A DNA stretch of 64,000 nt, taken from IMG/VR virus record IMGVR_UViG_3300028840_006257, positions 149,011 through 213,010 of that record; one strand, 5' to 3'. A program made the position numbers and the translations under genes. Under the pieces are notes generated by a model. It did no database searches, was not told the origin of the DNA, and worked only from the letters and a program-made list of their open reading frames with translations. This document shows, piece after piece, positions 35,322-51,784 of the stretch. How positions within the stretch are numbered: the first letter of the stretch is position 1; each line of letters begins with the position of its first letter.

Positions 35322-35386
35322 ACAACTGATGGAGCAGGGCGCCGCGCGTTTGAGTCTGTGGTGTGTAACCGACATCGTCTTCTCGG

Positions 35387-37665: not shown

Positions 37666-38358
37666 TCAGGCCCTGCGCCTCTCGTCGAGGATGGCTTGGA
37701 TGGCCCGGAAGCGACGGTTGCTCTCCTCGGCGAGCTCGTCGAGGCTCATGGGGACGATCTCGCGCTCGAGCCACGCCCCCAGGCTCTGCGGGGCCTCGGC
37801 CGGAGGGACGCCGAGGTGCAGATAGTGAGGTTTCACGGAGAGGAGCTGCCGCACCATCGGTCGGCTGTGGGTCGTGACGAACACGCCCCTCGTCTGCTCG
37901 GGAAGATCGGCCACGAACTCGGCCACGACCGTTCCAGCTCCGGCCGCGGCCGCCTCCCCCATGCCGATGTCGGGCTCGTCCCAGTAGAGGAGGTGCGAGT
38001 GCGTCCGAGCTCGGCACGTGCTGATGGCCGTCCTCACCGTCATTCCCGAGTTCTCTCCGGTGGAGCGGAAGCCCTCGTCTCCGTAGACGAAGCCCTTCAT
38101 CGCCCCCATCATGTTCATGCCGGCGCGGGCCTCCATGCTGAGGTGGATGACCTCCTTGATGGAGGTGTGGCTCTTGGCCGACGCCTGAACGCAGCGTCGG
38201 AAGAAGCTCTTCCCGCTCGCGTTCTCTCCGAGCACGAGGAAGAGGGGCGACGACCCCTTCACCCAGAGGGCCGGGATGGCGGGTTCGTCGCCGACGAAGT
38301 ATCGCCAGCTACCGAGGATGTTTCCGACGATCCAGAGGCCGGTGCTCGGCTTGCTCAT
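37666..38358 (-). CDS. stand-alone ABC-type ATPase
   Basis: GENASGKS, STGE signature, WDEPD, VTTHS. Confidence 0.8.
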   Translation of the reverse strand: MSKPSTGLWIVGNILGSWRYFVGDEPAIPALWVKGSSPLFLVLGENASGKSFFRRCVQASAKSHTSIKEVIHLSMEARAGMNMMGAMKGFVYGDEGFRSTGENSGMTVRTAISTCRARTHSHLLYWDEPDIGMGEAAAAGAGTVVAEFVADLPEQTRGVFVTTHSRPMVRQLLSVKPHYLHLGVPPAEAPQSLGAWLEREIVPMSLDELAEESNRRFRAIQAILDERRRA

Positions 38359-39197
38359 CGGTCTCCTCCGTCGAACAGGAGGATCCGGTCGAGCATGGCC
38401 GCCGGGAACCTGCGTCGCAGGATCTCCTCGGCCTCCTCGCGCGAGTGCTTCATGGACCTGTGCGTGAGCACGAGATAGTCGCCCTCGAATTTCTCGCAGT
38501 GCTCGGCCATCTCGGCCACGTGCGTGTGGCCGTAGCGCCGCGCGCCCTCGACGTTCGCGTCGTCCATCTCCCAGGTCGTGACCTCGTGGACGAGCACCTT
38601 GGCCCTCCGAGCCCTCTCGTGCTCCAGCAGGAAGTCGATCCGGGTGTCGCCCGAGACCACCAGGAGGGTGCTCACCACGTCGTCCGTGACCTGCACGCCC
38701 TCCCGACGGAGGCGCCCTATCTCGGAGCCCTCCATGCCGACGAACTCGGTCTTGAGCTTGCTCGTGGTGCGGTCGACGCCCCACCCGAGCGACGCCCCCC
38801 GGTGCCAGCTCCGCATCGCGTGTACGACCGCGCCGCGTCCGAGCTCGAAGAAGTAGCCGGGCCTCGCGGGGTAGAGGCGAACCTTCGCCTCGTGCTCGCT
38901 GTCCCGCTGCACGTCGCGCATCGCCTCGAGGAGCCTCTCCATCGGCTCGCCGAGCTCGTCCGGTAGGTAGACGCTCAGCGTCGCCTTGTTGCGCCGAATG
39001 GAGCGCAGGCTCACGATGTACGGGAGCGCCGCCACGTGGTCCGCGTGACCGTGGGTCAGGAAGACGTGGTCGACGGTCGCCCCTGGCACCGCGCCCGCGT
39101 CGAACACAGCGCGGATCTCGGGGACGTGGAACGCCGTCTGGCAGCCGCCCTGGGCGAACCCGTGCAGCGTCACGCCGCCTATGCTGATCTTCTCCAT
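38355..39197 (-). CDS. RNase Z-like metallo-beta-lactamase
   Basis: FDAG, THGHADH, SGDT, HEVT, GHTH, LTH.S. Confidence 0.85.
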   Translation of the reverse strand: MEKISIGGVTLHGFAQGGCQTAFHVPEIRAVFDAGAVPGATVDHVFLTHGHADHVAALPYIVSLRSIRRNKATLSVYLPDELGEPMERLLEAMRDVQRDSEHEAKVRLYPARPGYFFELGRGAVVHAMRSWHRGASLGWGVDRTTSKLKTEFVGMEGSEIGRLRREGVQVTDDVVSTLLVVSGDTRIDFLLEHERARRAKVLVHEVTTWEMDDANVEGARRYGHTHVAEMAEHCEKFEGDYLVLTHRSMKHSREEAEEILRRRFPAAMLDRILLFDGGDR

Positions 39198-39239
39198 GAT
39201 CACCTGCACGGGGCGTTCGTGAAATTTACAGAACCCCCG

Positions 39240-39431: not shown

Positions 39432-39451
39432 CTTGGATTCTTTCGAGGTTG

Positions 39452-39524
39452 TGCCCCAGGACGGAGTTGAACCGCCGACACTCTGGACTTCAGCCAGATG
39501 CTCTACCGCCTGAGCTACCGGGGC
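39452..39524 (-). tRNA. tRNA-Phe(GAA)
   Basis: Cloverleaf; TCTGG-CTGAAGT-CCAGA. Confidence 0.9.
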
Positions 39525-39525
39525 G

Positions 39526-39601
39526 TGGTCCCTCGGGCGGCGCTTGAATCCGCGTCTCCTGGGCTTCAACCAGGCGCTTGAACCGTCTCAGCTACCGAGG
39601 G
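39526..39601 (-). tRNA. tRNA-Phe(GAA), divergent copy with CCA
   Basis: CCCTCGG/CCGAGGG-A-CCA; CCTGG-TTGAAGC-CCAGG; imperfect T-stem. Confidence 0.75.
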
Positions 39602-39646
39602 GCATGGCATTGCGCCGAGCCGCTCTCCCGAAGGAGACCGACCCGG

Positions 39647-39799
39647 CTAGGCGAACAGCTCCGCGGTGACGGGGTGCGTGACGGGGATCGAACCCGTAAC
39701 CTCCTGGGCCACAACCAGGCGCTCTGCCATCCGAGCTCCACGCACCATGAGATGATGGTGTGGGGCCTCGTCGGCGTCGGTATGTCGTCCAGCGAGCAC
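39647..39799 (-). CDS. His-rich leader ORF reading through tRNA-His (50 aa)
   Basis: AGGA..GTG; MLAGRHTDADEAPHHHLM.., open to TAG 39649-39647. Confidence 0.5.
   Translation of the reverse strand: MLAGRHTDADEAPHHHLMVRGARMAERLVVAQEVTGSIPVTHPVTAELFA
39673..39746 (-). tRNA. tRNA-His(GUG)
   Basis: G-1:C73 pair; CCTGG-TTGTGGC-CCAGG. Confidence 0.92.
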
Positions 39800-39821
39800 G
39801 GTCTCGGTTCCTGAAGTGTTG

Positions 39822-39849
39822 AAGATACCCGAAAATCTCCGGGTGTCAA
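39822..39849 (-). promoter_or_regulatory. sigma70-type promoter
   Basis: TTGACA-16-TATCTT. Confidence 0.7.
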
Positions 39850-39855
39850 GTGGAG

Positions 39856-39932
39856 TGGTAGCGGGGACAGGATTTGAACCTGTGGCCTCCGGGTTATGAG
39901 CCCGACGAGCTACCTGACTGCTCTACCCCGCA
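39856..39932 (-). tRNA. initiator tRNA-fMet(CAU)
   Basis: 1:72 mismatch, GGG/CCC anticodon stem, CTCATAA loop, CCA. Confidence 0.92.
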
Positions 39933-40090
39933 TCATAGGGGACTTGCCGTTTCCAGACACCGGGTTCGGTGGAGATCGTCAACCAGGGCTCGATTCTACA
40001 TATCAATCGTCGTCCCCTGCGCTGCTTGACTCCGTCCACTATCGGGCGGTGTTGGGCCGCGGGTGTTCGCCGCGGAGGTCTCCTTTCGTC

Positions 40091-40399
40091 TCAGTGGTAG
40101 TCGTCCCAGATCTCGATGGCCCTCTCCGGCATCTCGTCCCCTTGGACCAGGTCCCAGAAGTCGCGGATGCCATTCCTGGAGAGGATGATTCCGGAGAGGA
40201 ACCGCGAACCGTCACCCGCGCCGAGCTCATCGGCCCACTCGAGTACCTCGTCCAGGCTCTCGAAGTCTCGGACGTGCCACGCCAGCTCCTGCACCTCGTC
40301 GGTCTGCTTCTTGTGGCGGAAGATGCCCTTCTGCCCCGTGCAGCCGTCGGTGAGGACGGGGTTGCCGCTCGTTCTCTTGACCGCGAATCGCATCGGCAT
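40091..40399 (-). CDS. hypothetical protein
   Basis: AGGAG RBS; about 100 aa. Confidence 0.6.
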   Translation of the reverse strand: MPMRFAVKRTSGNPVLTDGCTGQKGIFRHKKQTDEVQELAWHVRDFESLDEVLEWADELGAGDGSRFLSGIILSRNGIRDFWDLVQGDEMPERAIEIWDDYH

Positions 40400-40414
40400 C
40401 TCCTGGGCTGCGTG

Positions 40415-40455
40415 AAAGGAAACCCCGGAAGCCTCTCTCGAGGGGGCGTCCGGGG
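40415..40455 (-). terminator. probable terminator closing the ncRNA cluster
   Basis: CCCCGGA..TCCGGGG hairpin followed by TTTCCTTT. Confidence 0.55.
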
Positions 40456-40466
40456 ACGGGAAAGTT

Positions 40467-40618
40467 GGTCAACGCCGAGTGAAGAACCTTGATCGCGTTT
40501 TCACGCCAGATTTACACGTCTGGTGGCTTTTCCAATTTGCCTACCCCGCCGTGTGGTGGCGGGGGCTGGACTCGAACCAGCAAGGTTTGCTTGTGAGGTT
40601 GATCTGCGGGCGTTGACC
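40467..40618 (-). ncRNA. motif RNA D enclosing a circularly permuted tRNA-Tyr-like body (Y-RNA-like)
   Basis: GGTCAACGCC/GGCGTTGACC outer stem; order T-arm, acceptor hairpin with ACCA loop, D-arm, anticodon arm, variable arm. Confidence 0.75.
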
Positions 40619-40626
40619 TAAAGGGT

Positions 40627-40758
40627 AGAAGCGACCGAGTTGAAAGGCTGTTTGATGCAAGGAGCAGGACTTGAACCTGCGACCTTCGGTTTGTCGAACC
40701 GACGCTCAAGCCAGCTGAGCTGTCTTTGCTTGTGAGCCTGACCTTGGTGGTCGCTTCT
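40627..40758 (-). ncRNA. motif RNA C enclosing a tRNA-Val(GAC)-like body (40656-40729)
   Basis: AGAAGCGACC/GGTCGCTTCT outer stem, AGGCT/AGCCT inner stem, full cloverleaf inside. Confidence 0.75.
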
Positions 40759-40890
40759 TGGTGGCGGACCCTGGAGTCGAACCAGGTTGCTTGTGGACCT
40801 TCAACGGGTGCCTCTCCGGGAGAGGTGAGTGTTGTTGTCGGTTTTACCGATTTACCGTCGGGTGACCCCCCGCCGGGGTCTTGGTCCGCC
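40759..40890 (-). ncRNA. motif RNA B: tRNA-like RNA (GTA loop) with about 60-nt insert in the variable region
   Basis: GGCGGAC/GTCCGCC-A-CCA; CCTGG-TTCGACT-CCAGG; CCGA-CGGTAAA-TCGG. Confidence 0.7.
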
Positions 40891-41064: not shown

Positions 41065-41637
41065 TCAGATTTTCTCGACCCGCGCCGGCGAGATCGAGTA
41101 CCCCACCTTCCGGCGCGTCTGGACGAACTGCTGGACCGCGAGCGCGAGGAAGGCGCTCACGACTTGGATGAAGGGGAGAAATTCCCCCTCTTCGCAGGTG
41201 GCAGCCCCCGCCACGTCCTCGTCGTCGACCACGAAGTCCTCCTCCCAGATGATCCTCCCGTAGCCACCGTCGGCCGCGAGGGCCCCGTGGAGGCACGGGA
41301 CTCCGTTCGCGCGGGCGAAACCCTGGACGAGCCTGCGAGCCTCGCCGTTGTCTAGGCAGTCGACGAGGAGCTCGGCGCCGCCCAGGAGCTGGGTCGTGTT
41401 GTCGGCCGTGAGCTTGTGGCCCACGACGTCGACCTTGCGACCGAAGCAGAACTGCATGGCTCCCCGAAGCGCCTCGGTTTTCTTCTTGCCCACGCCAGCC
41501 CTCAGGTGGAACTGCGAGGCGACATTCTTCATCTCGACCCTGTCGAAATCCACGAGGGTCAGAATCACCTTCTCGTTCCGCAGGGCCTGAACCAGGTGCG
41601 AGCCCAGGGCGCCGGCTCCGACGATCGTGATCTTCAC
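41065..41637 (-). CDS. ThiF/MoeB/E1-like adenylyltransferase
   Basis: IVGAGALGS, DFDRVE.KN..SQ, GK.K, VDCLDN..AR, ATCE. Confidence 0.9.
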   Translation of the reverse strand: MKITIVGAGALGSHLVQALRNEKVILTLVDFDRVEMKNVASQFHLRAGVGKKKTEALRGAMQFCFGRKVDVVGHKLTADNTTQLLGGAELLVDCLDNGEARRLVQGFARANGVPCLHGALAADGGYGRIIWEEDFVVDDEDVAGAATCEEGEFLPFIQVVSAFLALAVQQFVQTRRKVGYSISPARVEKI

Positions 41638-41849
41638 GGCACGGTCCTCGCGTTTACGCTCCGCAGCTTTTTCCACTCGCCCTCGTGGAAACGGCAGTAG
41701 TGATGTTTGACGTTCACCTCGAGGCCGTCCTCCGTGCTTCGGATGTCGTGCGTGGGGATGACGATCCTGTCTCCCTCGATCCTGGCGCCGAGCACGGCGA
41801 GCATCTCCTCCAACCCCGGAGTGCATTCTCCCAGACGTTCGATGATCAT
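41634..41849 (-). CDS. hypothetical protein
   Basis: AGGAGG RBS; GTGA overlap with the E1 gene. Confidence 0.6.
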   Translation of the reverse strand: MIIERLGECTPGLEEMLAVLGARIEGDRIVIPTHDIRSTEDGLEVNVKHHYCRFHEGEWKKLRSVNARTVP

Positions 41850-41859
41850 GGCTTCCTCC

Positions 41860-42216
41860 TTACTTGGGTTTCCCGCGTCTCAGTAGCTCGTCGGCGACCA
41901 TGCCGAGGAACTCCTCCTTGCGGCGTTCGCGGTTGGCCTCGGCGTTGCGGAGCACCTCTCGCAGGTGGTCCACGGTCGACTCCCGCTTTTCGTCCACCTT
42001 CGACTGGATGCGCTTGGCATTCTCGATGGCGTCGAGCACGGACGTAGAGGGCCCTTTGGCGGTGAATGTCAGGGTCTCCCCGTTCTTCACGAGCCGCGAG
42101 GTCCCTCCGGCGTCCCGGTGCAGCTCCCGCAGGGCTCGGAACGCCTCCCTCGCCTTCGGCCACATCGAGCTAGGGACCCGAAGGGTGACGGTGTGCTCGA
42201 TAGGGTCGCCGACCAT
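41860..42216 (-). CDS. hypothetical protein
   Basis: 118 aa ORF within the operon. Confidence 0.6.
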   Translation of the reverse strand: MVGDPIEHTVTLRVPSSMWPKAREAFRALRELHRDAGGTSRLVKNGETLTFTAKGPSTSVLDAIENAKRIQSKVDEKRESTVDHLREVLRNAEANRERRKEEFLGMVADELLRRGKPK

Positions 42217-42222
42217 GCTCGC

Positions 42223-42477
42223 CTACCGTCCGAACGCGGCCTTGGGACGAAGGTAGAGCCGATTGCCCTGGTCGTCCTTCGCAGTGAATCTGTCCACCAC
42301 GAAGTCCCCGAAGTTGACGTTCGGGTCGGCGTCGATTCCGGGGACGTGCCCGGCGGCGACGGCCTCGGTGGCCCACGCCTTGATGTCGGCGTCGGTCGCG
42401 TCGAACTGGACCGGGTCCGGGAGGTCACCGTTCATCCCGTTCACGGTGATGTTGAGACGTGCCTCATTCTCTTCCAT
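42223..42477 (-). CDS. ubiquitin-like (beta-grasp) protein, C-terminus ..LRPKAAFGR
   Basis: 84 aa; N-terminal beta hairpin then helix pattern; penultimate Gly; lies between JAB and E1 genes. Confidence 0.65.
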   Translation of the reverse strand: MEENEARLNITVNGMNGDLPDPVQFDATDADIKAWATEAVAAGHVPGIDADPNVNFGDFVVDRFTAKDDQGNRLYLRPKAAFGR

Positions 42478-42856
42478 TTTCCTTCTCCTGTTCTGAGTGC
42501 TTGCGAAGCTGTGCGGTCCAGTCGGGCTCGTTCGTGAGGATCGACAACGCGTAGTCGTGCTCGCCCGGTCCTTTCCAGCGCAGGGCGACGACGTTCGATG
42601 AGCTCGTGATCCACCAGGTGAGGCGCCGGCCGAGACCATGCTCGACGGCGGCGAAGGTGGTGATGTCTTCGTGGGAGGGCCCTGGGACCCCGTTGCCGGG
42701 ATGGCTGTGCGCGAAGCCGAGGCCCTCGTCCTCGCGGTGCTTCCACAGGACCAGCCAGAGGTTCCGCTTGTCGGGAATGTTCCCTCCCGTCCTGTCGGGT
42801 GGCAGGTGCCAGAACACGGGGCCCCCGGCCGTGACGACGACGCCGGTCTCGATCAT
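42464..42856 (-). CDS. JAB/MPN+ metallopeptidase
   Basis: N-terminal E, HSHP......PS..D JAMM motif. Confidence 0.85.
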   Translation of the reverse strand: MIETGVVVTAGGPVFWHLPPDRTGGNIPDKRNLWLVLWKHREDEGLGFAHSHPGNGVPGPSHEDITTFAAVEHGLGRRLTWWITSSSNVVALRWKGPGEHDYALSILTNEPDWTAQLRKHSEQEKENGRE

Positions 42857-43383
42857 GGCTTGTCTCCCTTCAGGATCGTCGTCCGTATCCCCGCAGGAAG
42901 AAGCGCCTCGGGGCGCTCGAAGAACCACCCGAACAGCGGGAAGGGGGTTTCCCAGTCACGCCGGACGAGCACGAGGTCTTCGCCGGGGGCCGTCCTGTCC
43001 ACGCTGATCTCGGCGAACTTCACGAAGGGCCTCTGCTCCCGCTGGAACATGACCACGATGCCTTCGAAGTCGAACATCACGTACTCGGCGTAGATGTCAC
43101 GCCAGAAGGGAATCAGGGCGGCTACGAAGGCTTCGATGGACGAGTAGTTCCCCACCGATCCCCACGTGAACATGTCGCCCCTGGGACCGGCCCCGACGCC
43201 GTGCCCCTCGACGACGTACCGGAGCATCCGATGGGCGTCCGCGTTGTACCCGTCCTCCGCCGAGGGATACGGCGTGGACTCTTTGAGCGCCTCCATGATC
43301 TTGAGCTGTCGGCGCGCGCACACGAAGAGCTTCGCGTCGCTTCTGACCTCGAACTGGACGGTGATGTTGCAGCAGACGCTCAT
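42853..43383 (-). CDS. hypothetical protein
   Basis: ATGA overlaps on both sides. Confidence 0.65.
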   Translation of the reverse strand: MSVCCNITVQFEVRSDAKLFVCARRQLKIMEALKESTPYPSAEDGYNADAHRMLRYVVEGHGVGAGPRGDMFTWGSVGNYSSIEAFVAALIPFWRDIYAEYVMFDFEGIVVMFQREQRPFVKFAEISVDRTAPGEDLVLVRRDWETPFPLFGWFFERPEALLPAGIRTTILKGDKP

Positions 43384-44192
43384 ACGCCTTTCTTCTTTCG
43401 CAGGGCCCTCTCAGGGGGCCAGCCTTTCAGGAGACGGTAGCGAATCGTGGTGCTGCTCAGGCCCGTCTCTTCGGCCCAAGCAGCGAGGCATTGAATTTTT
43501 CCGAAGGCCCGAATTTCCCGGTTGTTACGACGATTGCGTGCCTGTTCTTTGCGAGTCGCCCACCGGACGTTTCCAGGTCCGTAGTCCCCATCGATGTCTA
43601 GCCGATCGAGCGTGTGGTGGGGGCTCGGGGAAGGTCCCATGTCTCGTAAAAAGTTGGCGAACGACGTGATCCAGGGTTCGTGGATTCCAATCCCACGACC
43701 TCCGTAATTTTCGTACCCCATGGCTTGCGGATCTAGGCACCTCTTTTTCATTGCGTGCCATGAATTCCACTCAGGTCTCCCCCACCCGCCGTGGATAGTC
43801 GCCGTTTTCCTCAACCTCTCGGCGGCCACCTCCTTGTTCAGACAGCCGCAGGATTTCGTTTTTTCGGCAAGCAAATCGTATCGCCAGATCCACCTTTCCG
43901 CGCCACAAGAGTAGCGACACAGCACCCATTGACGTTCATTCCTGAGAACGGTGAGACGGTGAAAGACAGTGCCCTGCGGGATGGAGACGGTCTTCGAGTG
44001 CTTCTTCCACTTCTCCTGAAGTTGCTGACGTCGCAGGCATCCGCAGGACTTGCTCGCTCCCCTGACGAGATTGCAGCGACGAAACGTCATTGACGTTCCG
44101 CACTCGCAGAGACACAGAACGTCCTTGTAGCCTCGGTCTTCCATGACAGTCAGACGGCCGAAGCGCTCCCCGCTCTCTAAACGTGTCGCCAT
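43380..44192 (-). CDS. free-standing HNH homing-endonuclease-like protein
   Basis: Two G..F.RLTV..C..SKSCGCL repeats; W..MK.RC, YGGRGI, LDR.D.DGDY.P.NVRWAT..EQ..N; lower GC. Confidence 0.85.
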   Translation of the reverse strand: MATRLESGERFGRLTVMEDRGYKDVLCLCECGTSMTFRRCNLVRGASKSCGCLRRQQLQEKWKKHSKTVSIPQGTVFHRLTVLRNERQWVLCRYSCGAERWIWRYDLLAEKTKSCGCLNKEVAAERLRKTATIHGGWGRPEWNSWHAMKKRCLDPQAMGYENYGGRGIGIHEPWITSFANFLRDMGPSPSPHHTLDRLDIDGDYGPGNVRWATRKEQARNRRNNREIRAFGKIQCLAAWAEETGLSSTTIRYRLLKGWPPERALRKKKGV

Positions 44193-45106
44193 ATCACCAG
44201 CTTGCCTTCTCTCACGGCTTGCCGAATGATAAGGGGCAGGCTTTCCAATGTAAAGTAGGTGTCGTAGGACTCCTCCGTGGCGTGGTCGGTGAGGCACACG
44301 CCCGCGTCGATGATGTGGAGGTTCGTGTCGCAGACGCACTCGAGGCGCTGGCCGTCGACGCGGTACTTCACGGCCCACTCTCCGCGACGGACCCTGCGGT
44401 GGTCGAGGTAGTCGGCTCCTCCCACTTGGAGCGCGGCCCTCGCAGCCTCGGCGAAGTTCTCCTGAGCCATGGCGCGTCGGGTGGCGCCGTCCCCGAGTCG
44501 TTCGCGGAGCTCGGCACGGCGCTGCTCCCGGAGCCTCCGGGCCTCCTCCTCGGCACGTCGCCGGGCGATCTCCTGCCGACGCAGCTCGGCCTGCTCGCGT
44601 CGGTACGTCTCCATGCGGAAGGCGGCGTCGAGGGCCGGGACGACGCCGGGAATCCCGGTCACGTCCTTCTTCCCGTCGAGGTAGGCGTCCATGACCTCGT
44701 TCTCGGGACCGAGCGGGAACGCCTGCTCGAGGAAGATGAGGGGGCCCTCTGGATAGATCCTCCCGGCCCGCACTCGGGAGAACCTGTCGAGCTCCTCGGG
44801 GATGAGGTGGACCCTCTCCGAGTGTCCCACGATCGTGGCGGGATCCGGGTCCACGCGGACCTCGTCGGAGACGATCCGGTCCCCGACGAGGTACCCGGTG
44901 ACAGGATTCCTGAGGATCTCAGGCACCGGCTCGGCGCTCTCGAAACTCGTGGCCGTGTTGCCCTCGATCCTGAACCGATACCACCCGAACTCGCGCAGGC
45001 GGCTCCCCAGCTTGAAGGTGCGGGAGTCCGAGTGGAGGGACGCGCCTCCCGTCCAGGGAAGGGTGACGGTCTCCGCGCCGCCGGCCAAGAGGTCCCTCCA
45101 TCCCAT
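44177..45106 (-). CDS. protein with candidate C-terminal E2/UBC-like domain
   Basis: LHIIDAGVCL..YDTYFTLESLPLII resembles UBC G.ICL..W.P..T; operon context. Confidence 0.5.
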   Translation of the reverse strand: MGWRDLLAGGAETVTLPWTGGASLHSDSRTFKLGSRLREFGWYRFRIEGNTATSFESAEPVPEILRNPVTGYLVGDRIVSDEVRVDPDPATIVGHSERVHLIPEELDRFSRVRAGRIYPEGPLIFLEQAFPLGPENEVMDAYLDGKKDVTGIPGVVPALDAAFRMETYRREQAELRRQEIARRRAEEEARRLREQRRAELRERLGDGATRRAMAQENFAEAARAALQVGGADYLDHRRVRRGEWAVKYRVDGQRLECVCDTNLHIIDAGVCLTDHATEESYDTYFTLESLPLIIRQAVREGKLVIWRHV

Positions 45107-45113
45107 GACTACC

Positions 45114-47039
45114 TCAGGCCCACGCGGGTCTCACGAGCAGGTCCGTCCTGATGATCTGCTCCACCAGGGTGACACGACGGGGGCGCGCCCCCTGTTGGAT
45201 GGCGTCGCCCACGGGCGTCGCCGCGACCAGGTTCCTGACGATTCGGGGGATCGCGTAGGGGTCGTCGAACGTGTCCTCCTGGATCATGAAGCACGGGATC
45301 CCCAGCTTGGCCGCCGTGTCCCGGACGGCCGTGGCGTAGTCGTCGCCGTAGTGACGACGGCGCCACGCGGCCCCGCCCTCCTCGGCCACGACCTTGAGGA
45401 AGCCGAACGCCATGGGACGCAGGCCCGAGGCCTCGACCTCGCGCTCGAACGTCCTCTGCTGCTCCTCGTCGCCGGCGAACACGAACAGCGAGTCCTCGTC
45501 GTCCTTCGGCTGGTGGTGTCGGAGCGCCCAGACGCCCTGGCCGTAGTCGGTCGCCCCGCTCGCGTCGATGCCCCTGAAGGCGTGCTCTACGAGCTTGGTC
45601 GACAGCGAGCCGTCGAGCCCGTCGGCGCCCGCTGGTGCCCTGATGACGATCTCCTTCCCCACCGTGTTGAAGCAGGAGACGTGGACCCTGTCGGGCGGGA
45701 ACGACTGGAGGAACTTCGCGATCAGAGGCTTGGCGCGCTCGAGCGCCCCCTTCATCGAGGAGGAGCGGTCCACGATGAAGTAGGTGCGGATGTGTCGAAC
45801 TACCTCCTCGACGACCTTCTGGCTCGCCTTGTCGCCTCCCTCCTCCATCTGGTCTCTGAGCTCCTTCGACCGCACGTTGCGGGCGATGTTGGCCGCGCGC
45901 ATGTCCTCGGCGCGGGCCAGGGCCGCGGCGTGGCGCTCCTTGACGTCCTGCACCTTGAGGAGCCCTAGCTCCTCGAGGGTGGGCGTCATGATGATGATGT
46001 CCTTGTCGGACACGGAGCCCGCGTCGATGGCCGCGGCCACGACCGCGCGGGTGACTCCGATCTCCTTCGGGAGCAGGCCGACGATGCGTTTCCATCCGGG
46101 CCTGTCCTCCTCGATCTTGCGGCAGACGTCCTCCTCGCTGAGGTGCGCCCAGGACTCGGCCACCTTGACGTGCTTGCCGATCGCCATCTCGCGGCGTCCG
46201 TCCTCCGCCTGCTTCTGCTTCCACCGCAGTAGCTCGAAGAACCACTCGGAGCTCGGCTTGTAGCCGATCTTCCTGGCGAGGGTCATGACCGTGGTCCTGA
46301 ACCCGGCCTTCACGAGCCCCTCGAGCATCTTCGGGTTCTCCTCGCGGTACCGGAGCCACTTCTCCACGGCCTTGGGCCATCGGCCCAGGAAGGGACGCCT
46401 GGCCGACCGACCGAAGCCGAGCTCGCGGTTGATGGCCGCGATCTCGGGCACGGTCAGGACCTCCCAGATGCGCAGGAGCAGCTTCGGGTTCAGGTCCCGG
46501 TTCTTCTCCTGAAGGAGCATCATGGCCTCGCCCACGTCGCGGTAGTCTTCGTCCTCGAACAGGACCTCGCCGGCGTCGACGACGGGATCGCCCTTGCGAG
46601 ACTGCACCAGCATGAAGGCCGCGAGCACGACCTTCAGGTCCCGGTGCTCCTGACGGAACGCGTAGCTCGCCCAGCGCGCGGCGAACTCGTTGTCCATCTG
46701 CCACACGGCGGCGACCTGCCTGTAGAACCAGACGGCGACCTCGGGGAAGAGGCCGCTCTTGCGGTACAGCCCGATCTCACGGCCACCGTGGACGACCCTG
46801 TCGTCGCCGTCCATGGTGCCGATCTGGACGCGCTGCTGCTTCTTCCCGCGCCTCTCGAGGCGGTACACGACGCGCTCGCCATTCTCGCCCGCCTTGTGGG
46901 TGACGGGTTCCCACCTGACTCCGACAGTCGTACGCTGGTCGGGAACCACGATCCCGGGGCGTCCATGATATAGATGGTCCTGATGAGCGAGCAGTGTGTT
47001 GATGATCTGCTCGGCAGGTCCTAGACTTTCCTTTTCCAT
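45114..47039 (-). CDS. Ro60/TROVE-like helical protein with C-terminal vWA domain
   Basis: vWA MIDAS VDRSSSM, GATD, AGD; N-terminal FAARWASYAF..R, TLARKIGYKP, ESW echo TROVE motifs; GAGGAG RBS. Confidence 0.65.
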   Translation of the reverse strand: MEKESLGPAEQIINTLLAHQDHLYHGRPGIVVPDQRTTVGVRWEPVTHKAGENGERVVYRLERRGKKQQRVQIGTMDGDDRVVHGGREIGLYRKSGLFPEVAVWFYRQVAAVWQMDNEFAARWASYAFRQEHRDLKVVLAAFMLVQSRKGDPVVDAGEVLFEDEDYRDVGEAMMLLQEKNRDLNPKLLLRIWEVLTVPEIAAINRELGFGRSARRPFLGRWPKAVEKWLRYREENPKMLEGLVKAGFRTTVMTLARKIGYKPSSEWFFELLRWKQKQAEDGRREMAIGKHVKVAESWAHLSEEDVCRKIEEDRPGWKRIVGLLPKEIGVTRAVVAAAIDAGSVSDKDIIIMTPTLEELGLLKVQDVKERHAAALARAEDMRAANIARNVRSKELRDQMEEGGDKASQKVVEEVVRHIRTYFIVDRSSSMKGALERAKPLIAKFLQSFPPDRVHVSCFNTVGKEIVIRAPAGADGLDGSLSTKLVEHAFRGIDASGATDYGQGVWALRHHQPKDDEDSLFVFAGDEEQQRTFEREVEASGLRPMAFGFLKVVAEEGGAAWRRRHYGDDYATAVRDTAAKLGIPCFMIQEDTFDDPYAIPRIVRNLVAATPVGDAIQQGARPRRVTLVEQIIRTDLLVRPAWA

Positions 47040-47041
47040 GG

Positions 47042-47255
47042 CTAACTCCTCATGTGGGTTCGAATTCTGTGACAGACAGAGCAGACAAGGTCGCACTTGG
47101 CGATCTCAGCGAGAAGGAGAGGCACAGAGCCGCGGTAGACAAGGGCTGACACTTTGTCGATTTTCGTGGCCGGGTTACGGTGATCGAAATCCATCGCACA
47201 GGACGGAAAGGTCTTGCCGCAGTCAGCACACGGCCCTTGCTTTCTTATCGGTCAT
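47042..47255 (-). pseudogene. HNH endonuclease remnant
   Basis: PCADCG..P..MDFDH..EIAKCDLVCSVCHRIRT; the RBS-led ATG at 47255 is out of frame. Confidence 0.7.
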
Positions 47256-47414
47256 GGTCTTGTTCCTCTCTCATTCGTGCAAAGTGGAGCACCTCGGGCC
47301 TTCCCTTGTACTCCAGACGCAACGTAAAAAGCCGACCCTCCTGCAAACAGGGCCGAAATCCGTGTTTCGCTCCTCTTATGCCCTTGAAGGGCGTTTTTTC
47401 CGTTGATCCTTGGG

Positions 47415-47488
47415 TCCCGGAGGAGAGACTTGAACTCTCGACCTCCCGCTTATGAGGCGGGCGCTCTCGCCAGCTGAGCTACTCCGGA
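47415..47488 (-). tRNA. tRNA-Met/Ile2(CAU)
   Basis: Cloverleaf; CCCGC-CTCATAA-GCGGG. Confidence 0.88.
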
Positions 47489-47516
47489 GGTTGTGGACGC
47501 GTTTTCTGGGTCTCGG

Positions 47517-47590
47517 TAGCGGGGGTCGGATTCGAACCGACGGTACCCGGATCATGAGTCCGGCGCCTTACCTGACTTGGCTACCCCGCA
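47517..47590 (-). tRNA. tRNA-Met(CAU) with 1:72 mismatch
   Basis: CCGGA-CTCATGA-TCCGG. Confidence 0.85.
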
Positions 47591-47610
47591 TCGTGTTGCC
47601 GGGTTCCTTT

Positions 47611-47642
47611 TGGTGGATGTGGGAAGACTCGAACTTCCGAAG
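47611..47642 (-). pseudogene. orphan tRNA 3' half
   Basis: GGAAG-TTCGAGT-CTTCC-CACATCC-A-CCA with no matching 5' half nearby. Confidence 0.65.
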
Positions 47643-47650
47643 GCAGACGG

Positions 47651-47724
47651 TCGGCCCGGCTGGATTCGAACCAGCGATCTCCACTGTATCAGAGTGGCGT
47701 CCTCACCAACTAGACCACAGGCCG
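47651..47724 (-). tRNA. tRNA-Ile(GAU)
   Basis: CCACT-CTGATAC-AGTGG; Asp/Glu-style D arm. Confidence 0.82.
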
Positions 47725-47788
47725 AGCTGGGAATCGCAATCTCGCTGTCGGGAGCGCCCATCGTCTTCTCCTTTCCTGGTTGTCTCGG

Positions 47789-47862
47789 TAGGCCCGCCCG
47801 GACTCGAACCGGGGACCCCCCGTCGTGTCGAGACGGTGCTCTTCCTGCTGAGCTACGAGGCT
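47789..47862 (-). tRNA. tRNA-Val(GAC)
   Basis: CCGTC-TCGACAC-GACGG; one acceptor mismatch; C33. Confidence 0.8.
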
Positions 47863-47865
47863 GTG

Positions 47866-48054
47866 TCATTGTAGGCCCGCCCGGATTCGAACCGGGGACC
47901 CCTGTCGTGTGAAGGCAGTGTTCTCCCACTGAACTACGGACCTGCATGGGCGGGGTGAACGGGACTCGAACCCGCGACCTCCGAATCGACAATCCGGCGT
48001 TCTGGCCATCTGAACTACCACCCCAAGGCGATCGTCATCGTCATCATCAGCCAT
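47866..48054 (-). CDS. poly-Asp leader ORF reading through tRNA-Asp and tRNA-Val(CAC)
   Basis: AAAGGAGG RBS, ATG GCT, six Asp codons, CGC CTT, then the tRNA-Asp 5' end. Confidence 0.6.
   Translation of the reverse strand: MADDDDDDRLGVVVQMARTPDCRFGGRGFESRSPRPCRSVVQWENTAFTRQGSPVRIRAGLQ
47872..47943 (-). tRNA. tRNA-Val(CAC)
   Basis: Loop TTCACAC; 3' end nearly identical to Val(GAC). Confidence 0.85.
47951..48024 (-). tRNA. tRNA-Asp(GUC)
   Basis: CCGGA-TTGTCGA-TTCGG; G73. Confidence 0.9.
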
Positions 48055-48096
48055 TGGACTGTCCTCCTTTCGGTTGCGGATTTGAGGGTCTTGCTG

Positions 48097-48169
48097 AGCC
48101 GGAGGTGGGAATCGAACCCACGAGTTTCCTCTTTACCAAAGAGGTGCCTTTCCACTTGGCCACACCGGC
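48097..48169 (-). tRNA. tRNA-Thr(GGU)
   Basis: CCTCT-TTGGTAA-AGAGG. Confidence 0.88.
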
Positions 48170-48175
48170 GTCGGA

Positions 48176-48439
48176 TCAGTCCCAATGCGGTAGAACTTCA
48201 ACAGGGTCCTGGTCCTGAAGATGTTTCGTCAGGAGTTCAGTTGTCGCCGCGTCTTCTGAGTTCTCTGGAGCGGCACCTTTCAGCATCGCTTCGAACCATG
48301 TTCGATGCTCGGCTCGGAGACGTCCGTCTAGTGCCCGCTGAAGCCTCTCCATACGGTATGCGCCGCGCGGATTGCCGTTCTTTTCATCCGCATCGTCAAG
48401 ACTTTGCGTGTATCTGAGGAAATTTTTGACGGTGATCAT
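48176..48439 (-). CDS. hypothetical protein inside the tRNA array
   Basis: AAAGGAG RBS; lower GC. Confidence 0.55.
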   Translation of the reverse strand: MITVKNFLRYTQSLDDADEKNGNPRGAYRMERLQRALDGRLRAEHRTWFEAMLKGAAPENSEDAATTELLTKHLQDQDPVEVLPHWD

Positions 48440-48481
48440 GGATTTTCTCTCTCCTTTCAGTTCTGTAACCTGGGTACACTG

Positions 48482-48555
48482 AGCCCGCGGTCGGAATCGA
48501 ACCGACGAACCTGCCGATTACGAATCGGCCGCTCTGCCGACTGAGCTACACGGGC
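48482..48555 (-). tRNA. tRNA-Thr(CGU)
   Basis: GCCGA-TTCGTAA-TCGGC. Confidence 0.92.
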
Positions 48556-48590
48556 GCGTTTTTGTCTCTTCTCTCGATGAAAGTTCTCGG

Positions 48591-48662
48591 AGCTGGCGAT
48601 GGGAGTCGAACCCGCAACCGCCTGATTACAAATCAGGTGCTCTACCGTTGAGCTACGCCAGC
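48591..48662 (-). tRNA. tRNA-Thr(UGU)
   Basis: CCTGA-TTTGTAA-TCAGG. Confidence 0.92.
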
Positions 48663-49780: not shown

Positions 49781-50833
49781 TTACGTGTTGCCGCGGGCCA
49801 GGACCTCCGCGAAGGACACCTTGAACTGATGCTCGCCGATCACGGCCCAGCGACCGGGGTCAAGGTCGGCGTTGTACCAGTCCCACCAGACGATCGACTT
49901 CTCGGGGGTCGGCGTCCGAGAGAGGAGATCCCTCATCTCTGCTGGCGTCTTGTACGCCGTGCTCGCGGGCACGACCTTCTCGTAGCCGAGAGCCCGCCAC
50001 TCGGCCACGGAGCGTGTCGGGTAGTCCTCGGGCATCGAGTTCTGGGAGTCGTAGATCTGCGGGACCCCGAAGTCTGCCTTGGAGAATTCCGCGAACGGGA
50101 ATCTCGCGTGGTACCAGGGCGCTCCGTAGCTCGTCAGGCCGACGGGGCATCCGAGGCTCGTCATCTTGTCGATCAGGACCGTGGCCTGGGCGCCCTGGTC
50201 GTACCAGGGAGCCTCGCAGTCCATGACGATCCCCTTCGCCCCCCACTCCTGCCGTGTCTCCCACATGGTCGCGACGTAGTCGTCCTCGCGGTTCGGCACC
50301 GGCCAACCCCAGATCCAGAGCTCGCAGCCCGTGTCCTCCCACGCCCGCTTGTAGTCGTCGAAGCTCGACTCGTTGTAGTACTTGTCGTCGTTCGGGTCGT
50401 CGTACTGCCAGAGGCGTTGGACGCAGATCCACTGGATGCCGCGTTCGGTGATGTGCTGCTTCATGTTGTCGACGGTGCCGGTACCGGTCAGGCTCCGCAC
50501 GAACATCCCCTTCCCCCGCGGGATCCTGGCGTCGGGCTCCGGCTCGGGAGGCTGGGGTTCGGGCTCCGTGGGCGGCGTCGGGCCGAAGTCCACGCACACC
50601 TGGTTGAAGAGCATCGTGAGCGTGCGCAGGTCGACGGCGAGCGACAGGGTGTCGTTGTAGGAGTGGTCGATCTCGAAGCGCTCGATCGCCTTCCTGGTCT
50701 CGTCGCCGAAGATGCCGTCGACGGTGAGCTCGTAGCCGGCGAAGACGAGCGCCTCCTGCAGCGCCGTGATCTTGTCTCCCCGGGCGCCGTACTTGTAGTT
50801 GCGGGGATCGATCGTGAAGGGATTGGTCGCCAT
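49781..50833 (-). CDS. modular endolysin-like protein (PG-binding domain, Pro/Glu linker, glycoside-hydrolase-like domain)
   Basis: LQEAL..AGY..VDGIFG.ET..AI; DCE, GLTSY, PQIY. Confidence 0.75.
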   Translation of the reverse strand: MATNPFTIDPRNYKYGARGDKITALQEALVFAGYELTVDGIFGDETRKAIERFEIDHSYNDTLSLAVDLRTLTMLFNQVCVDFGPTPPTEPEPQPPEPEPDARIPRGKGMFVRSLTGTGTVDNMKQHITERGIQWICVQRLWQYDDPNDDKYYNESSFDDYKRAWEDTGCELWIWGWPVPNREDDYVATMWETRQEWGAKGIVMDCEAPWYDQGAQATVLIDKMTSLGCPVGLTSYGAPWYHARFPFAEFSKADFGVPQIYDSQNSMPEDYPTRSVAEWRALGYEKVVPASTAYKTPAEMRDLLSRTPTPEKSIVWWDWYNADLDPGRWAVIGEHQFKVSFAEVLARGNT

Positions 50834-50853
50834 CCCCCACACTACCGACCGTC

Positions 50854-51705: not shown

Positions 51706-51784
51706 GTCACGAACCAGGAAGCGATAGACCCAAAAACCGGGGCCCCTTGGCGTGGTGCTTCGTCTATGGCCTCCCCCTCGTCGA

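What the first reader, a model, noticed from the sequence alone, without database searches (positions are those of the whole stretch)
41065..47039. Phage operon joining a Ro60/TROVE-vWA-like protein to a ubiquitin-like conjugation pathway
Seen, co-oriented and mostly overlapping: TROVE-vWA-like, E2-like (HIIDAGVCL), HNH insert, unknown, JAB, Ubl, two unknowns, E1 (with a candidate catalytic Cys in ATCE), then the ncRNA array. The Ubl ends FG-R, so the JAB would have to trim one residue to expose Gly. Known: bacterial E1-E2-Ubl-JAB systems (Bil; related enzymes in CBASS) are anti-phage. Here the set is phage-borne inside a tRNA region. Inference: an RNP in which tRNA-mimic RNAs bait host anticodon nucleases or translation factors for Ubl tagging, or a sulfur-relay or repair system for tRNA.
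Basis: partly seen in the sequence, partly recalled or inferred. Interest (0 to 1): 0.88.

Follow-up and report, generated by a model that had tools for sequence, protein, structure and literature searches.

The report
Ubiquitin-like tagging module inside tRNA arrays
A giant phage carries, in the middle of its tRNA genes, a conserved five-gene kit for trimming and activating a small ubiquitin-like protein.

Summary
The nine co-oriented genes are real. Only five form a conserved unit:
- p1, a vWA/MIDAS protein
- p2, a 309-aa protein with one invariant Cys
- a JAMM peptidase
- an 84-aa ubiquitin-like precursor
- a minimal ThiF-type E1 with an invariant Cys

Their order is kept in about 70 non-redundant jumbo-phage loci. 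Homing endonucleases and orphan genes (p3, p4, p7, p8 here) come and go between them.

The Ubl reading rests on two results:
- An invariant RPKTPFG end is followed by 0, 1, a few, or about 50-115 extra residues.
- In all 7 loci without a JAMM gene, the Ubl stops exactly at the Gly. These loci represent at least 3-5 separate losses.

The TROVE/Ro60 reading failed every test, and no Y RNA was found. The E2 reading is open. Foldseek found no UBC fold, but the Gly-x-Cys-Leu motif is 98-99% conserved and shared with a cyanobacterial homologue that lies directly beside the E1.

The quartet of Ubl, vWA protein, p2-like protein and E1 also occurs in cyanobacteria. There it is embedded in or beside tRNA genes, together with a bL12 paralog, a CCA-type nucleotidyltransferase, RNase T and EndoV.

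The best reading is a mobile Ubl-transfer module that accompanies long tRNA arrays. Its target is unknown, possibly the translation apparatus.

The parts
45114..47042 (-). p1: 642-aa vWA/MIDAS protein. N-terminal helix, beta domain (30-94), helical region (100-415), vWA (418-608). A core gene.
   Evidence: Pfam VWA_2 in 43/44 relatives. MIDAS residues D425, S427, S429, T498, D525 are invariant. AF2 pLDDT 82.7. Foldseek top 50 are all vWA domains. No TROVE signal. A homologue lies in the cyanobacterial cassette: hhalign 98.9%, E 3e-17.
44177..45106 (-). p2: 309-aa protein of a new family. Beta-rich N-terminal domain, long helix, then a C-terminal helix + four-strand meander + loop carrying the invariant Cys271 (G-x-C-L). 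Candidate Ubl carrier with an E2-like role. A core gene.
   Evidence: At least 1386 homologues, none with a Pfam domain, and 485 representatives at 50% identity, all with the same architecture. Conservation: G269 99%, C271 98.5%, L272 95.5%, D282 and E288 about 96%. AF2 pLDDT 84.6. No fold match in the PDB or BFVD. The cyanobacterial homologue lies next to the E1: hhalign 88.6%, E 2.7e-6.
43380..44192 (-). p3: HNH homing endonuclease. A variable insert, not part of the core.
   Evidence: phrog_374, 4e-61. Found in only 8 of 58 loci. HNH and LAGLIDADG genes recur at different positions in relatives.
42853..43383 (-). p4: 176-aa orphan ORF, not conserved.
   Evidence: No family hit. Found in 3 of 58 loci.
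42464..42856 (-). JAMM/MPN+ metallopeptidase. The likely start is the ATG at 42856, which overlaps the p4 stop as ATGA. A core gene in phages.
   Evidence: Prok-JAB 0.0019. E27, H74, H76, S85, D88 are invariant in 50 sequences. Its presence goes with Ubl tails.
42223..42477 (-). Ubl precursor, 84 aa, ending ...RPKAAFG-R. A core gene.
   Evidence: 148 homologues. An invariant RPKTPFG end is followed by 0, 1, a few, or about 50-115 residues. All 7 loci without JAMM end at the Gly. The beta-grasp fold was not tested.
41860..42216 (-). p7: 118-aa orphan ORF, not conserved.
   Evidence: Found only in the window's own contig. No family hit.
41634..41849 (-). p8: 71-aa orphan ORF, not conserved.
   Evidence: Found only in the window's own contig.
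41065..41637 (-). Minimal E1 (ThiF/MoeB-type adenylation domain, about 190 aa) with the invariant Cys150 in 'TCE'. It has no CxxC zinc motifs and no rhodanese domain. A core gene.
   Evidence: Pfam ThiF 1e-22. PADLOC E1-E2 models match only the E1 part, 7e-14. Best PDB match is MoeB, 4.5e-8. Conservation. Cys present in 32/32.
47413..48662 (-). Upstream block of 9 co-oriented tRNA genes.
   Evidence: ARAGORN and Rfam.
39451..40890 (-). Downstream block: 5 co-oriented tRNA genes (39451-40729) and a 135-nt tRNA-like RNA (40757-40890) that ends in CCA.
   Evidence: Fold with z = -3.0.

Best explanation
The locus is a self-contained module for ubiquitin-like protein (Ubl) activation and transfer. 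It travels with long tRNA gene arrays.

Shown, or close to shown:
- Five genes form the unit: p1 (vWA-MIDAS), p2, JAMM, pro-Ubl and E1.
- The Ubl is made as a precursor whose invariant ...PFG end is capped by a variable tail.
- A catalytically intact JAMM peptidase is encoded whenever a tail exists.
- The E1 has a complete adenylation site and an invariant Cys.

Inferred mechanism:
- JAMM cuts after the Gly.
- The E1 adenylates the Gly carboxylate and takes the Ubl onto Cys150 as a thioester.
- The Ubl passes to the single invariant Cys271 of p2. p2 plays the E2 role without being a recognisable UBC protein.
- p1 uses its MIDAS site to hold the Ubl or the substrate, as an E3-like adaptor.

The target is unknown. 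The module is embedded in tRNA arrays, in phages and in cyanobacteria. Its variable companions are a bL12 paralog, a CCA-type nucleotidyltransferase, RNase T, EndoV, an exoribonuclease, NUDIX and AlkB. This context points to the translation or tRNA-maintenance apparatus, acting when translation is under attack or stress.
For: Synteny:
- The order p1-p2-JAMM-Ubl-E1 is kept in 58/58 fetched phage loci, 54 of them with E1, and in the MAG loci. Protein identity falls to 35-50% and the inserts between the genes vary.

Ubl:
- The invariant RPKTPFG end carries tails of 0 to 115 residues.
- In one relative the tail is a whole Lockin domain.
- All 7 loci without JAMM have no tail, against 12/74 loci with JAMM (Fisher p = 1.4e-5).
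- The JAMM-less loci sit at 3-5 separate places on the p2 tree.

Enzymes:
- The JAMM motif is invariant.
- E1 motifs and Cys150 are conserved in 32/32 sequences, cyanobacteria included.
- p2 Cys271 is 98.5% conserved within G-x-C-L, while the other Cys and His residues are not conserved.

Cyanobacterial version:
- It has the Ubl (ending ...VYG-stop), a vWA protein (hhalign 98.9%), a p2-like protein (88.6%) directly upstream of ThiF, and no JAMM.

tRNA link:
- 48/72 non-redundant phage loci have tRNAs inside or within 2 kb.
- 633/638 tRNAs are co-oriented with the cassette.
- 7 of 8 cyanobacterial loci have tRNAs embedded, with 16 and 21 tRNA genes (counted across each fetched locus) on two plasmids.
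- No minus-strand terminator-like site lies inside the cassette.
Against: - No UBC fold or E2 family match was found for p2. Foldseek gives nothing below E 0.1 against the PDB or BFVD, and Pfam, PADLOC and NCBIfam are all empty.
- The beta-grasp fold of the Ubl was not tested, and its profile finds nothing in the PDB or Pfam.
- No substrate, thioester or conjugate has been observed.
- The E1 is closest to MoeB, ThiF and Uba4, which are sulfur-carrier enzymes.
- About a third of phage loci show no tRNA within the fetched flanks.
- Synteny among related phages is partly inherited rather than independently selected.
Confidence: 0.55

Rival explanations
1. Sulfur-carrier system. The E1 adenylates the trimmed Ubl, which is converted to a thiocarboxylate. 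That donates sulfur for a thio-modification of the array's tRNAs or of a small molecule, as in TtuB/TtuC, Urm1/Uba4, CysO/Mec+ or QbsCDE. p2 Cys271 would carry a persulfide.
For: - The E1 is nearest to MoeB, ThiF, MoeZ and Uba4.
- Tail trimming of a carrier protein by a JAMM peptidase is established for QbsD/QbsE and Mec+/CysO (established knowledge).
- The tRNA context.
- No E2 fold was detected.
Against: - About 80 loci hold no rhodanese, cysteine desulfurase, PP-loop thiolase (TtuA/Ncs6/MnmA type) or other sulfur acceptor enzyme.
- The E1 has no rhodanese domain.
- Ubl tails can be whole folded domains, as in ubiquitin fusions.
- Two extra obligatory proteins, p1 and p2, have no counterpart in any known sulfur relay.
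Confidence: 0.2
2. A Ro60-like RNP in which tRNA-mimic RNAs bait host anticodon nucleases or translation factors, which are then tagged with the Ubl.
For: - p1 has the overall layout 'helical region + vWA with MIDAS', as Ro60 does.
- One 135-nt tRNA-like RNA lies just downstream of the E1.
- The cassette sits in tRNA arrays.
Against: - TROVE failed every test.
- No Y RNA was found: YrlA hits score 23-26 bits against a threshold of 69, and two of the three overlap tRNA genes.
- The flanking RNAs are ordinary tRNAs.
- No nuclease target has been identified.
Confidence: 0.07
3. Counter-defence by interference. The phage JAMM and E1 act on host Ubl-type immune pathways (type II CBASS Cap2/Cap3, or Bil), or the Ubl merely serves as a cleavable expression tag for anti-defence cargo such as Lockin.
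For: - The Ubl-Lockin fusion in L003.
- PADLOC E1-E2 (Cap2-type) models match the E1.
- The variable cargo tails.
Against: - The same quartet, without JAMM and without tails, is chromosomal in many cyanobacteria, so it is not a phage-only weapon.
- Most tails are a single residue.
- The PADLOC matches cover only the generic adenylation domain.
Confidence: 0.1
4. No system at all. The genes are unrelated neighbours in a variable 'moron' region.
For: - Many inserted orphan genes and homing endonucleases.
Against: - Five genes keep their order across about 70 non-redundant loci.
- Four of them recur together in cyanobacteria at 25-40% identity.
- JAMM presence covaries with Ubl tails.
Confidence: 0.02

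Closest known systems
Bil (bacterial ISG15-like) defence systems: BilA Ubl, BilB E2, BilC JAMM, BilD E1
   Same: A separate Ubl, JAMM peptidase, E1 and a Cys-bearing partner in one operon. The Ubl C-terminal Gly is activated by a ThiF-type E1.
   Different: - This module is carried by a phage and by cyanobacterial tRNA arrays, not by a defence island.
- p2 has no detectable UBC fold.
- There is an obligatory vWA-MIDAS protein.
- No PADLOC or NCBIfam model matches apart from the generic E1.
Type II CBASS Cap2 (E1-E2 fusion) / Cap3 (JAMM)
   Same: An E1 adenylation domain of similar type (PADLOC 7e-14), with a JAMM that acts on the C-terminus.
   Different: - No CD-NTase is present.
- The E1 is not fused to an E2.
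- A dedicated Ubl is present.
E2-less archaeal/bacterial Ubl systems that double as sulfur carriers (SAMP/UbaA/HvJAMM1; TtuB/TtuC; Urm1/Uba4)
   Same: A minimal E1, a small Ubl and a JAMM. These systems have an established link to tRNA (thiolation).
   Different: - No rhodanese or PP-loop partner is present.
- Two extra conserved proteins are present.
- The Ubl ends in FG, not GG, and often carries long tails.
QbsCDE and CysO/Mec+ (JAMM trims residues after the carrier's Gly)
   Same: A precursor with extra residues after the Gly, removed by a dedicated JAMM. The JAMM is unnecessary when the gene ends at the Gly.
   Different: Those systems are biosynthetic sulfur carriers with a MoeZ-type E1-rhodanese. 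Nothing of that kind is present here.
Ro60 (Rsr)/Y RNA (YrlA) RNP of bacteria and mycobacteriophages
   Same: A helical region followed by a vWA domain with an intact MIDAS, next to tRNA-like genes.
   Different: - No TROVE homology by Pfam, PDB profile, Foldseek or hhalign against Bxz1 gp220.
- No Y RNA.
vWA-MoxR 'FtsH ternary' conflict systems (Kaur et al. 2020, PMC7159879)
   Same: A vWA protein genetically coupled to JAB, E1 and a Ubl. L12/ClpS-like domains appear in some of the vWA components.
   Different: - No MoxR or FtsH ATPase, RING E3, Ubl-E2 fusion or caspase effector lies in the cassette.
- The context is tRNA arrays.
[quoted passage not shown] 2021, PMC8421152)
   Same: Mobile arrays of co-oriented tRNA genes with embedded protein genes, including HNH homing endonucleases and RNA-processing genes. 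They are induced by translational stress in Anabaena.
   Different: The text of that paper does not mention ThiF, vWA or ubiquitin. The Ubl quartet as a recurrent passenger of such arrays appears to be unreported.
Rea1/Midasin MIDAS domain binding the UBL domains of Rsa4/Ytm1 (established knowledge)
   Same: A precedent for a MIDAS site gripping an acidic residue of a ubiquitin-like domain, in a ribosome-related process.
   Different: This is an analogy only. No homology was tested, and no AAA+ motor is present.

Membership tests
Ro60 / TROVE-vWA | TROVE (HEAT-like ring) domain | tested here: not met
   - No Pfam TROVE hit in 44 family members.
- The family profile against the PDB finds only vWA.
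- No Ro60 in the Foldseek top 50.
- hhalign against Bxz1 Ro-like gp220: 7% probability, 55 columns at the MIDAS only.
Ro60 / TROVE-vWA | C-terminal vWA domain with MIDAS | tested here: met
   VWA_2 in 43/44 members. DxSxS...T...D is invariant. Foldseek hits are vWA domains at E 6e-6.
Ro60 / TROVE-vWA | Adjacent Y RNA (YrlA-type) | tested here: not met
   Rfam at gathering threshold finds only tRNA. YrlA hits score 23-26 bits against a threshold of 69, and two of the three overlap tRNA genes.
E1 / ThiF-MoeB-UBA adenylation enzymes | Rossmann-type nucleotide site (GxGxxG, DxD, Arg/Lys, DxxDN) | tested here: met
   Pfam ThiF 1e-22. The motifs are conserved in 46 sequences. Best PDB match is MoeB, 4.5e-8.
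E1 / ThiF-MoeB-UBA adenylation enzymes | Catalytic Cys that forms a thioester with the Ubl | not testable with these tools
   Cys150 is invariant in 32/32 phage and cyanobacterial E1s. The chemistry itself needs an experiment.
JAMM/MPN+ metallopeptidases | E...HxH...S..D zinc site | tested here: met
   E27, H74, H76, S85, D88 are invariant in 50 sequences. Pfam Prok-JAB gives a weak hit, 0.0019.
Ubiquitin-like modifiers / carrier proteins | Conserved C-terminal Gly exposed directly or after trimming | tested here: met
   RPKTPFG followed by variable tails. The tail is absent in all 7 loci without JAMM. The cyanobacterial Ubl ends ...VYG-stop.
Ubiquitin-like modifiers / carrier proteins | Beta-grasp fold | not tested
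   Both structure-prediction jobs went to p1 and p2. The profile finds nothing in the PDB or Pfam.
UBC / E2 conjugating enzymes | UBC fold (helix, four-strand meander, Cys loop, C-terminal helices) | tested here: inconclusive
   The AF2 model of residues 205-309 has the same order of elements. But Foldseek finds no E2 against the PDB (best E 0.48) or BFVD (best E 0.11), and no Pfam or PADLOC E2 model matches. A search with the C-terminal domain alone could not be run.
UBC / E2 conjugating enzymes | Invariant catalytic Cys | tested here: met
   C271 98.5%, G269 99%, L272 95.5% in 133 diverse representatives. The motif is kept in the cyanobacterial homologues.
UBC / E2 conjugating enzymes | HPN motif upstream of the Cys | tested here: not met
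   The His of 'HIID' varies between H, Q, R and G.
Bil / type II CBASS defence systems | Family-specific profiles for all components; a CD-NTase for CBASS | tested here: not met
   Only the E1 matches PADLOC, and only generic E1-E2 models over the E1 part. No CD-NTase lies in any locus.
Ubl sulfur-carrier pathways (ThiS/ThiF, MoaD/MoeB, CysO, QbsE, TtuB, Urm1) | Sulfur donor (rhodanese or desulfurase) and sulfur-accepting enzyme in the operon or fused | tested here: not met
   None was found in the phage or cyanobacterial neighbourhoods. All NCBIfam equivalog scores are far below their cut-offs.
vWA-MoxR ternary systems | MoxR AAA+ ATPase partner of the vWA protein | tested here: not met
   No AAA+ gene lies in the cassette in phages. 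A MoxR-DUF58-transglutaminase operon lies 1.5-3.5 kb downstream in two Nostocales loci only.
SWIM-type zinc module (considered for the p2 C-terminus) | Conserved CxC...C..H metal ligands | tested here: not met
   C259 is only 49% conserved (Val in most others) and H275 only 43% across 133 representatives.

The most novel reading that the evidence does not exclude
Long tRNA arrays in jumbo phages and in cyanobacteria carry their own ubiquitin-like conjugation machine: E1, a non-UBC Cys carrier, and a MIDAS adaptor. It tags a component of the translation apparatus, for example the bL12 stalk, a translational GTPase or a tRNA-processing enzyme. Array-encoded tRNAs can then take over translation when the host's tRNAs or ribosomes are under attack. 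That would make it a mobile 'translation rescue' package and a new branch of E2-like enzymes.
Probability: 0.25. Interest if true: 0.9.

Novelty: new variant of a known kind. Interest (0 to 1): 0.8.

Why it matters
- Prokaryotic ubiquitin-like conjugation is so far known from anti-phage defence (Bil, type II CBASS) and from sulfur carriers. Here the same chemistry appears on the phage side, and in cyanobacteria in a quite different setting: physically embedded in long tRNA arrays.
- The system brings two new obligatory protein families. p2 has at least 1386 phage-type and 1736 cyanobacterial homologues, none of them annotated.
- It offers a testable hypothesis for what accompanies tRNA arrays, whose role in translational stress and in escaping tRNA-targeting defences is a current question.
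- It offers a candidate for a new kind of E2-like carrier.
- It shows a natural ubiquitin-style fusion of a Ubl to an anti-defence sponge (Lockin).

Tried and rejected
- **Known phage?** Megablast of the locus against 50,697 phage records found nothing. By tblastn only Virus Rctr197k matches, with hypothetical proteins.
- **TROVE/Ro60 for p1.** Rejected.
- **Zinc (SWIM-like CxC..C..H) site in p2.** It was suggested by the first alignment of close relatives. It was rejected when 133 diverse representatives showed C259 and H275 to be poorly conserved.
- **PRTRC, Bil, CBASS and 6A-MBL membership.** Only generic E1 similarity was found.
- **Lockin in this window.** Absent. It occurs only as the Ubl tail in L003/L004. 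The local Pfam copy did not reproduce the precomputed PF26760 hit, but the PDB sequence search did.
- **Remote homologues of p2 with other architectures.** None were found among the best 150 representatives.
- **Fold search of p2 against viral models.** Nothing was found.
- **Ubl profile against the PDB and Pfam.** Nothing was found.
- **Recurrent accessory genes inside the cassette.** Mostly singletons. The recurrent ones are LAGLIDADG and HNH homing endonucleases.
- **Literature.** I found no paper describing the cassette.
- **OB-fold reading of the p2 N-terminus.** Foldseek hits to HIN, S1 and eIF1A-type barrels have E 0.5-2 and probabilities below 0.3. I treat this as a hint only.

Full report
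**What is in the window.** The window is high-GC DNA (about 65%). It matches a 213-kb IMG/VR viral contig at 100% identity over p2. It also carries a DNA polymerase, helicases, an NAD-dependent ligase, GroEL and methyltransferases, plus 15-16 tRNA genes.

Nine co-oriented minus-strand ORFs lie between two blocks of co-oriented tRNA genes, with overlapping or abutting ends:

| Gene | Coordinates | Size |
|---|---|---|
| p1 | 47042-45114 | 642 aa |
| p2 | 45106-44177 | 309 aa |
| p3 | 44192-43380 | about 270 aa |
| p4 | 43383-42853 | 176 aa |
| JAMM | 42856-42464 | about 130 aa |
| Ubl | 42477-42223 | 84 aa |
| p7 | 42216-41860 | 118 aa |
| p8 | 41849-41634 | 71 aa |
| E1 | 41637-41065 | about 190 aa |

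No minus-strand terminator-like site and no excess of promoter-like sites lies inside the cassette.

**Which parts of the observation hold.**
- The E1 is solid. Pfam ThiF scores 1e-22 and MoeB is the best solved relative. That Cys is present in 32 of 32 phage and cyanobacterial E1s.
- The JAMM gives only a weak Pfam hit. Its complete zinc-site signature is nevertheless invariant in 50 sequences.
- p3 is an HNH homing endonuclease.
- p1 has a genuine vWA domain with an intact MIDAS.
- The Ro60/TROVE label failed every test. There is no TROVE hit in 44 family members. The family profile finds only vWA matches in the PDB. No Ro60 appears among the top Foldseek hits for a model with pLDDT 82.7. 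The only match to the Ro-like protein of mycobacteriophage Bxz1 is 55 columns at 7% probability.
- Rfam finds no Y RNA.

**The unit is five genes, not nine.** p2 belongs to a large, unannotated family: at least 1386 proteins at E ≤ 0.001 and 485 representatives at 50% identity, the 150 listed all about 300 aa.

A scan of viral contigs returned 54 loci, mostly on contigs of 130-620 kb. A scan of genomes returned 24 MAG contigs, mostly binned to Myxococcota.

The order p1, p2, JAMM, Ubl, E1 is kept in these loci. p3, p4, p7 and p8 are almost never present. The genes inserted between the core genes are mostly singletons. The recurrent ones are LAGLIDADG and HNH homing endonucleases. Occasional inserts include NUDIX, a 3'-5' exoribonuclease, a methyltransferase and a protein with a bL12 C-terminal domain.

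**The small protein behaves like a ubiquitin-like precursor.**
- In 148 homologues and about 70 loci, an invariant RPKTPFG motif is followed by nothing, by one variable residue (the commonest case, as here), by 2-14 residues, or by whole domains of about 50-115 residues.
- In locus L003 the tail is a Lockin domain (PDB 9p8l, E 3e-20). Lockin is a phage sponge for Thoeris immune signals (PMC13712596).
- Seven loci lack the JAMM gene, and in all seven the Ubl gene stops right after the Gly. With JAMM present, about five in six Ubl genes carry a tail (Fisher p = 1.4e-5).
- On a p2 tree the JAMM-less loci need five changes, at least three of them forced by well-supported branches. The covariation is therefore not one inherited event.
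- This is the expected signature of a peptidase that exposes the Gly.

**Is p2 an E2?**
- The model (pLDDT 84.6) has a beta-rich N-terminal domain and a long helix. Its C-terminal part runs helix, four-strand meander, Cys loop, helix. That is the same order of elements as a UBC core.
- Foldseek finds no E2, and nothing below E 0.1, in the PDB or BFVD. No family library matches either.
- Close relatives suggested a CxC...C..H zinc site. Across 133 diverse representatives C259 (49%) and H275 (43%) are not conserved, while G269 (99%), C271 (98.5%) and L272 (95.5%) are. One universal Cys in a G-x-C-L motif fits a catalytic or carrier Cys better than a metal site.
- My conclusion is that an E2-like role is plausible, and membership of the UBC family is not shown.

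**A cellular counterpart.**
- The best plasmid match of the E1 (40% identity) is on a Kovacikia minuta megaplasmid. That locus (L084) holds 16 co-oriented tRNA genes, with a Ubl gene among the last of them. These are followed by a vWA protein homologous to p1 (hhalign 98.9%, E 3e-17, over the helical and vWA parts), a CCA/poly(A)-type nucleotidyltransferase, an unknown gene, a p2-like protein and ThiF.
- The p2-like family has 1736 members in cyanobacteria. It matches the phage family at 88.6% probability and shares the G-x-C-L and D..F.L.SL motifs.
- In Nostoc, Calothrix, Aulosira and a metagenomic relative the order is: Ubl (66-69 aa, ending ...VYG-stop in the copies read, L085 and L084), a 229-241-aa protein, a tRNA gene, a full bL12 paralog, the vWA protein, a gap, then p2-like directly followed by ThiF.
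- On a Leptolyngbya plasmid about 20 tRNA genes precede the Ubl. EndoV lies between the Ubl and the vWA gene. The nucleotidyltransferase, NADAR and RNase T lie between the vWA and p2-like genes.
- None of these loci has a JAMM, and the cyanobacterial Ubl genes read here stop at the Gly. That agrees with the covariation seen in phages.

**The tRNA link.**
- In 72 non-redundant phage and MAG loci, 48 have a tRNA gene inside the cassette or within 2 kb, and 29 have them on both sides. Of 638 tRNA genes, 633 are co-oriented with the cassette.
- Synteny among related phages could be inherited. The same association in cyanobacteria, at 25-40% protein identity, argues that the link is functional.
- Long tRNA arrays are known to be mobile. 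They carry HNH genes and RNA-processing genes, and in Anabaena they are induced by translational stress (PMC8421152). The text of that paper does not mention ThiF, vWA or ubiquitin.
- A survey of 224 jumbo phages does not mention JAB, ThiF or Ubl (PMC7824862).
- A coupling of vWA proteins with JAB, E1 and Ubl genes is known in MoxR/FtsH ternary conflict systems (PMC7159879). The ATPases, RING and effector of those systems are absent here.

**Mechanism.**
- Shown by sequence: the catalytic motifs of the JAMM and E1 are intact, the Ubl is capped, the cap covaries with JAMM, each of E1 and p2 has one universal Cys, p2 and E1 are adjacent, and p1 has a conserved MIDAS.
- Inferred: JAMM trims the cap. 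The E1 adenylates the Gly and forms a thioester. The Ubl moves to p2 Cys271. p1 holds the Ubl or the substrate through its MIDAS, by analogy with the Midasin MIDAS gripping UBL domains (established knowledge, not tested here).
- The target is unknown. The company the cassette keeps (tRNA arrays, a bL12 paralog, a CCA-type enzyme, RNase T, EndoV, an exoribonuclease, AlkB after the E1 in L003) points to translation or tRNA maintenance.
- The main rival is a sulfur-carrier role, which fits the E1's nearest relatives and the tRNA setting. It lacks every sulfur-handling partner in about 80 loci, and it does not explain domain-sized tails or the two extra core proteins.

**Verdict.**
TROVE does not, and the E2 call is unsettled.
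- I found no description of the system in the libraries searched. It is widespread, and it extends Ubl conjugation-type chemistry to phage-borne and array-borne modules with two new partner families.
- I class it as a new variant of a known kind, with high interest.

Noticed in passing
L003:12518-13138 (also L004:5466-6086): The Ubl is fused after its ...PFG to a Lockin domain (PDB 9p8l, E 3e-20). Lockin is a phage sponge for Thoeris signals. This is a natural ubiquitin-style fusion of a Ubl to an anti-defence protein. Other Ubl tails carry CxxC zinc-ribbon-like peptides or 50-60-aa domains.
   Followed up: partly
window 40757-40890 (-): A 135-nt tRNA-like RNA just downstream of the E1. It has an 8-bp acceptor stem with an encoded CCA, a D-like hairpin, a canonical T arm, and a branched insert where the anticodon arm should be. 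Neither ARAGORN nor Rfam calls it a tRNA. The fold has z = -3.0. Its conservation in relatives was not checked.
   Followed up: partly
window 40545-40600 (-): A T-arm plus CCA remnant without a matching 5' acceptor strand. It gives a weak YrlA hit (24.5 bits against a threshold of 69). It is probably a decayed tRNA.
   Followed up: partly
window 35233-35320 (-): An 88-nt tRNA (long variable arm?) found by Rfam at 38.9 bits but missed by ARAGORN.
   Followed up: no
window 38355-39209 (-): A metallo-beta-lactamase-fold protein (Lactamase_B_2, 2.5e-12) just downstream of the 39451-40729 tRNA block, between it and tRNA-Lys at 35385. It may be an RNase Z-like tRNA 3'-processing enzyme.
   Followed up: no
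L085:4634-5026; L087:4539-4919; L090:6013-6393; L091:4609-4989; phage L028:8956-9414: A full paralog of ribosomal stalk protein bL12, read in L085, where a charged linker replaces the Ala/Gly hinge. It sits inside the cyanobacterial cassettes. A protein with a bL12 C-terminal domain sits between p2 and JAMM in two phage loci.
   Followed up: partly
L089:3529-9994: On a Leptolyngbya plasmid the cassette holds EndoV, a CCA/poly(A)-type nucleotidyltransferase, DUF4291, NADAR and RNase T between the Ubl and the p2-like gene. It lies right after about 20 tRNA genes.
   Followed up: partly
L087:11061-15403; L090:14392-18722: A MoxR (AAA_3)-DUF58-transglutaminase operon lies 1.5-3.5 kb downstream of the E1 in two Nostocales loci, but not in the others. 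The link is uncertain.
   Followed up: no
L059-L082 (genome contigs): All genome hits of p2 are MAG contigs, mostly binned to Myxococcota (Polyangiaceae, Kofleriaceae, Sandaracinaceae). This is a likely host clue for this jumbo-phage lineage, or a sign of mis-binned phage contigs.
   Followed up: no
L015:15517-15877: A related phage locus carries a tmRNA gene at the end of its tRNA array, downstream of the cassette.
   Followed up: no
window 51370-52125 (-): A protein with an S-adenosylmethionine decarboxylase domain (1e-31), near an endolysin-like gene with a peptidoglycan-binding domain (49781-50965).
   Followed up: no
window 5211-9359 (+): The large helicase gene contains a LAGLIDADG homing-endonuclease-like segment (residues 740-884), which suggests an intein or an inserted endonuclease.
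   Followed up: no
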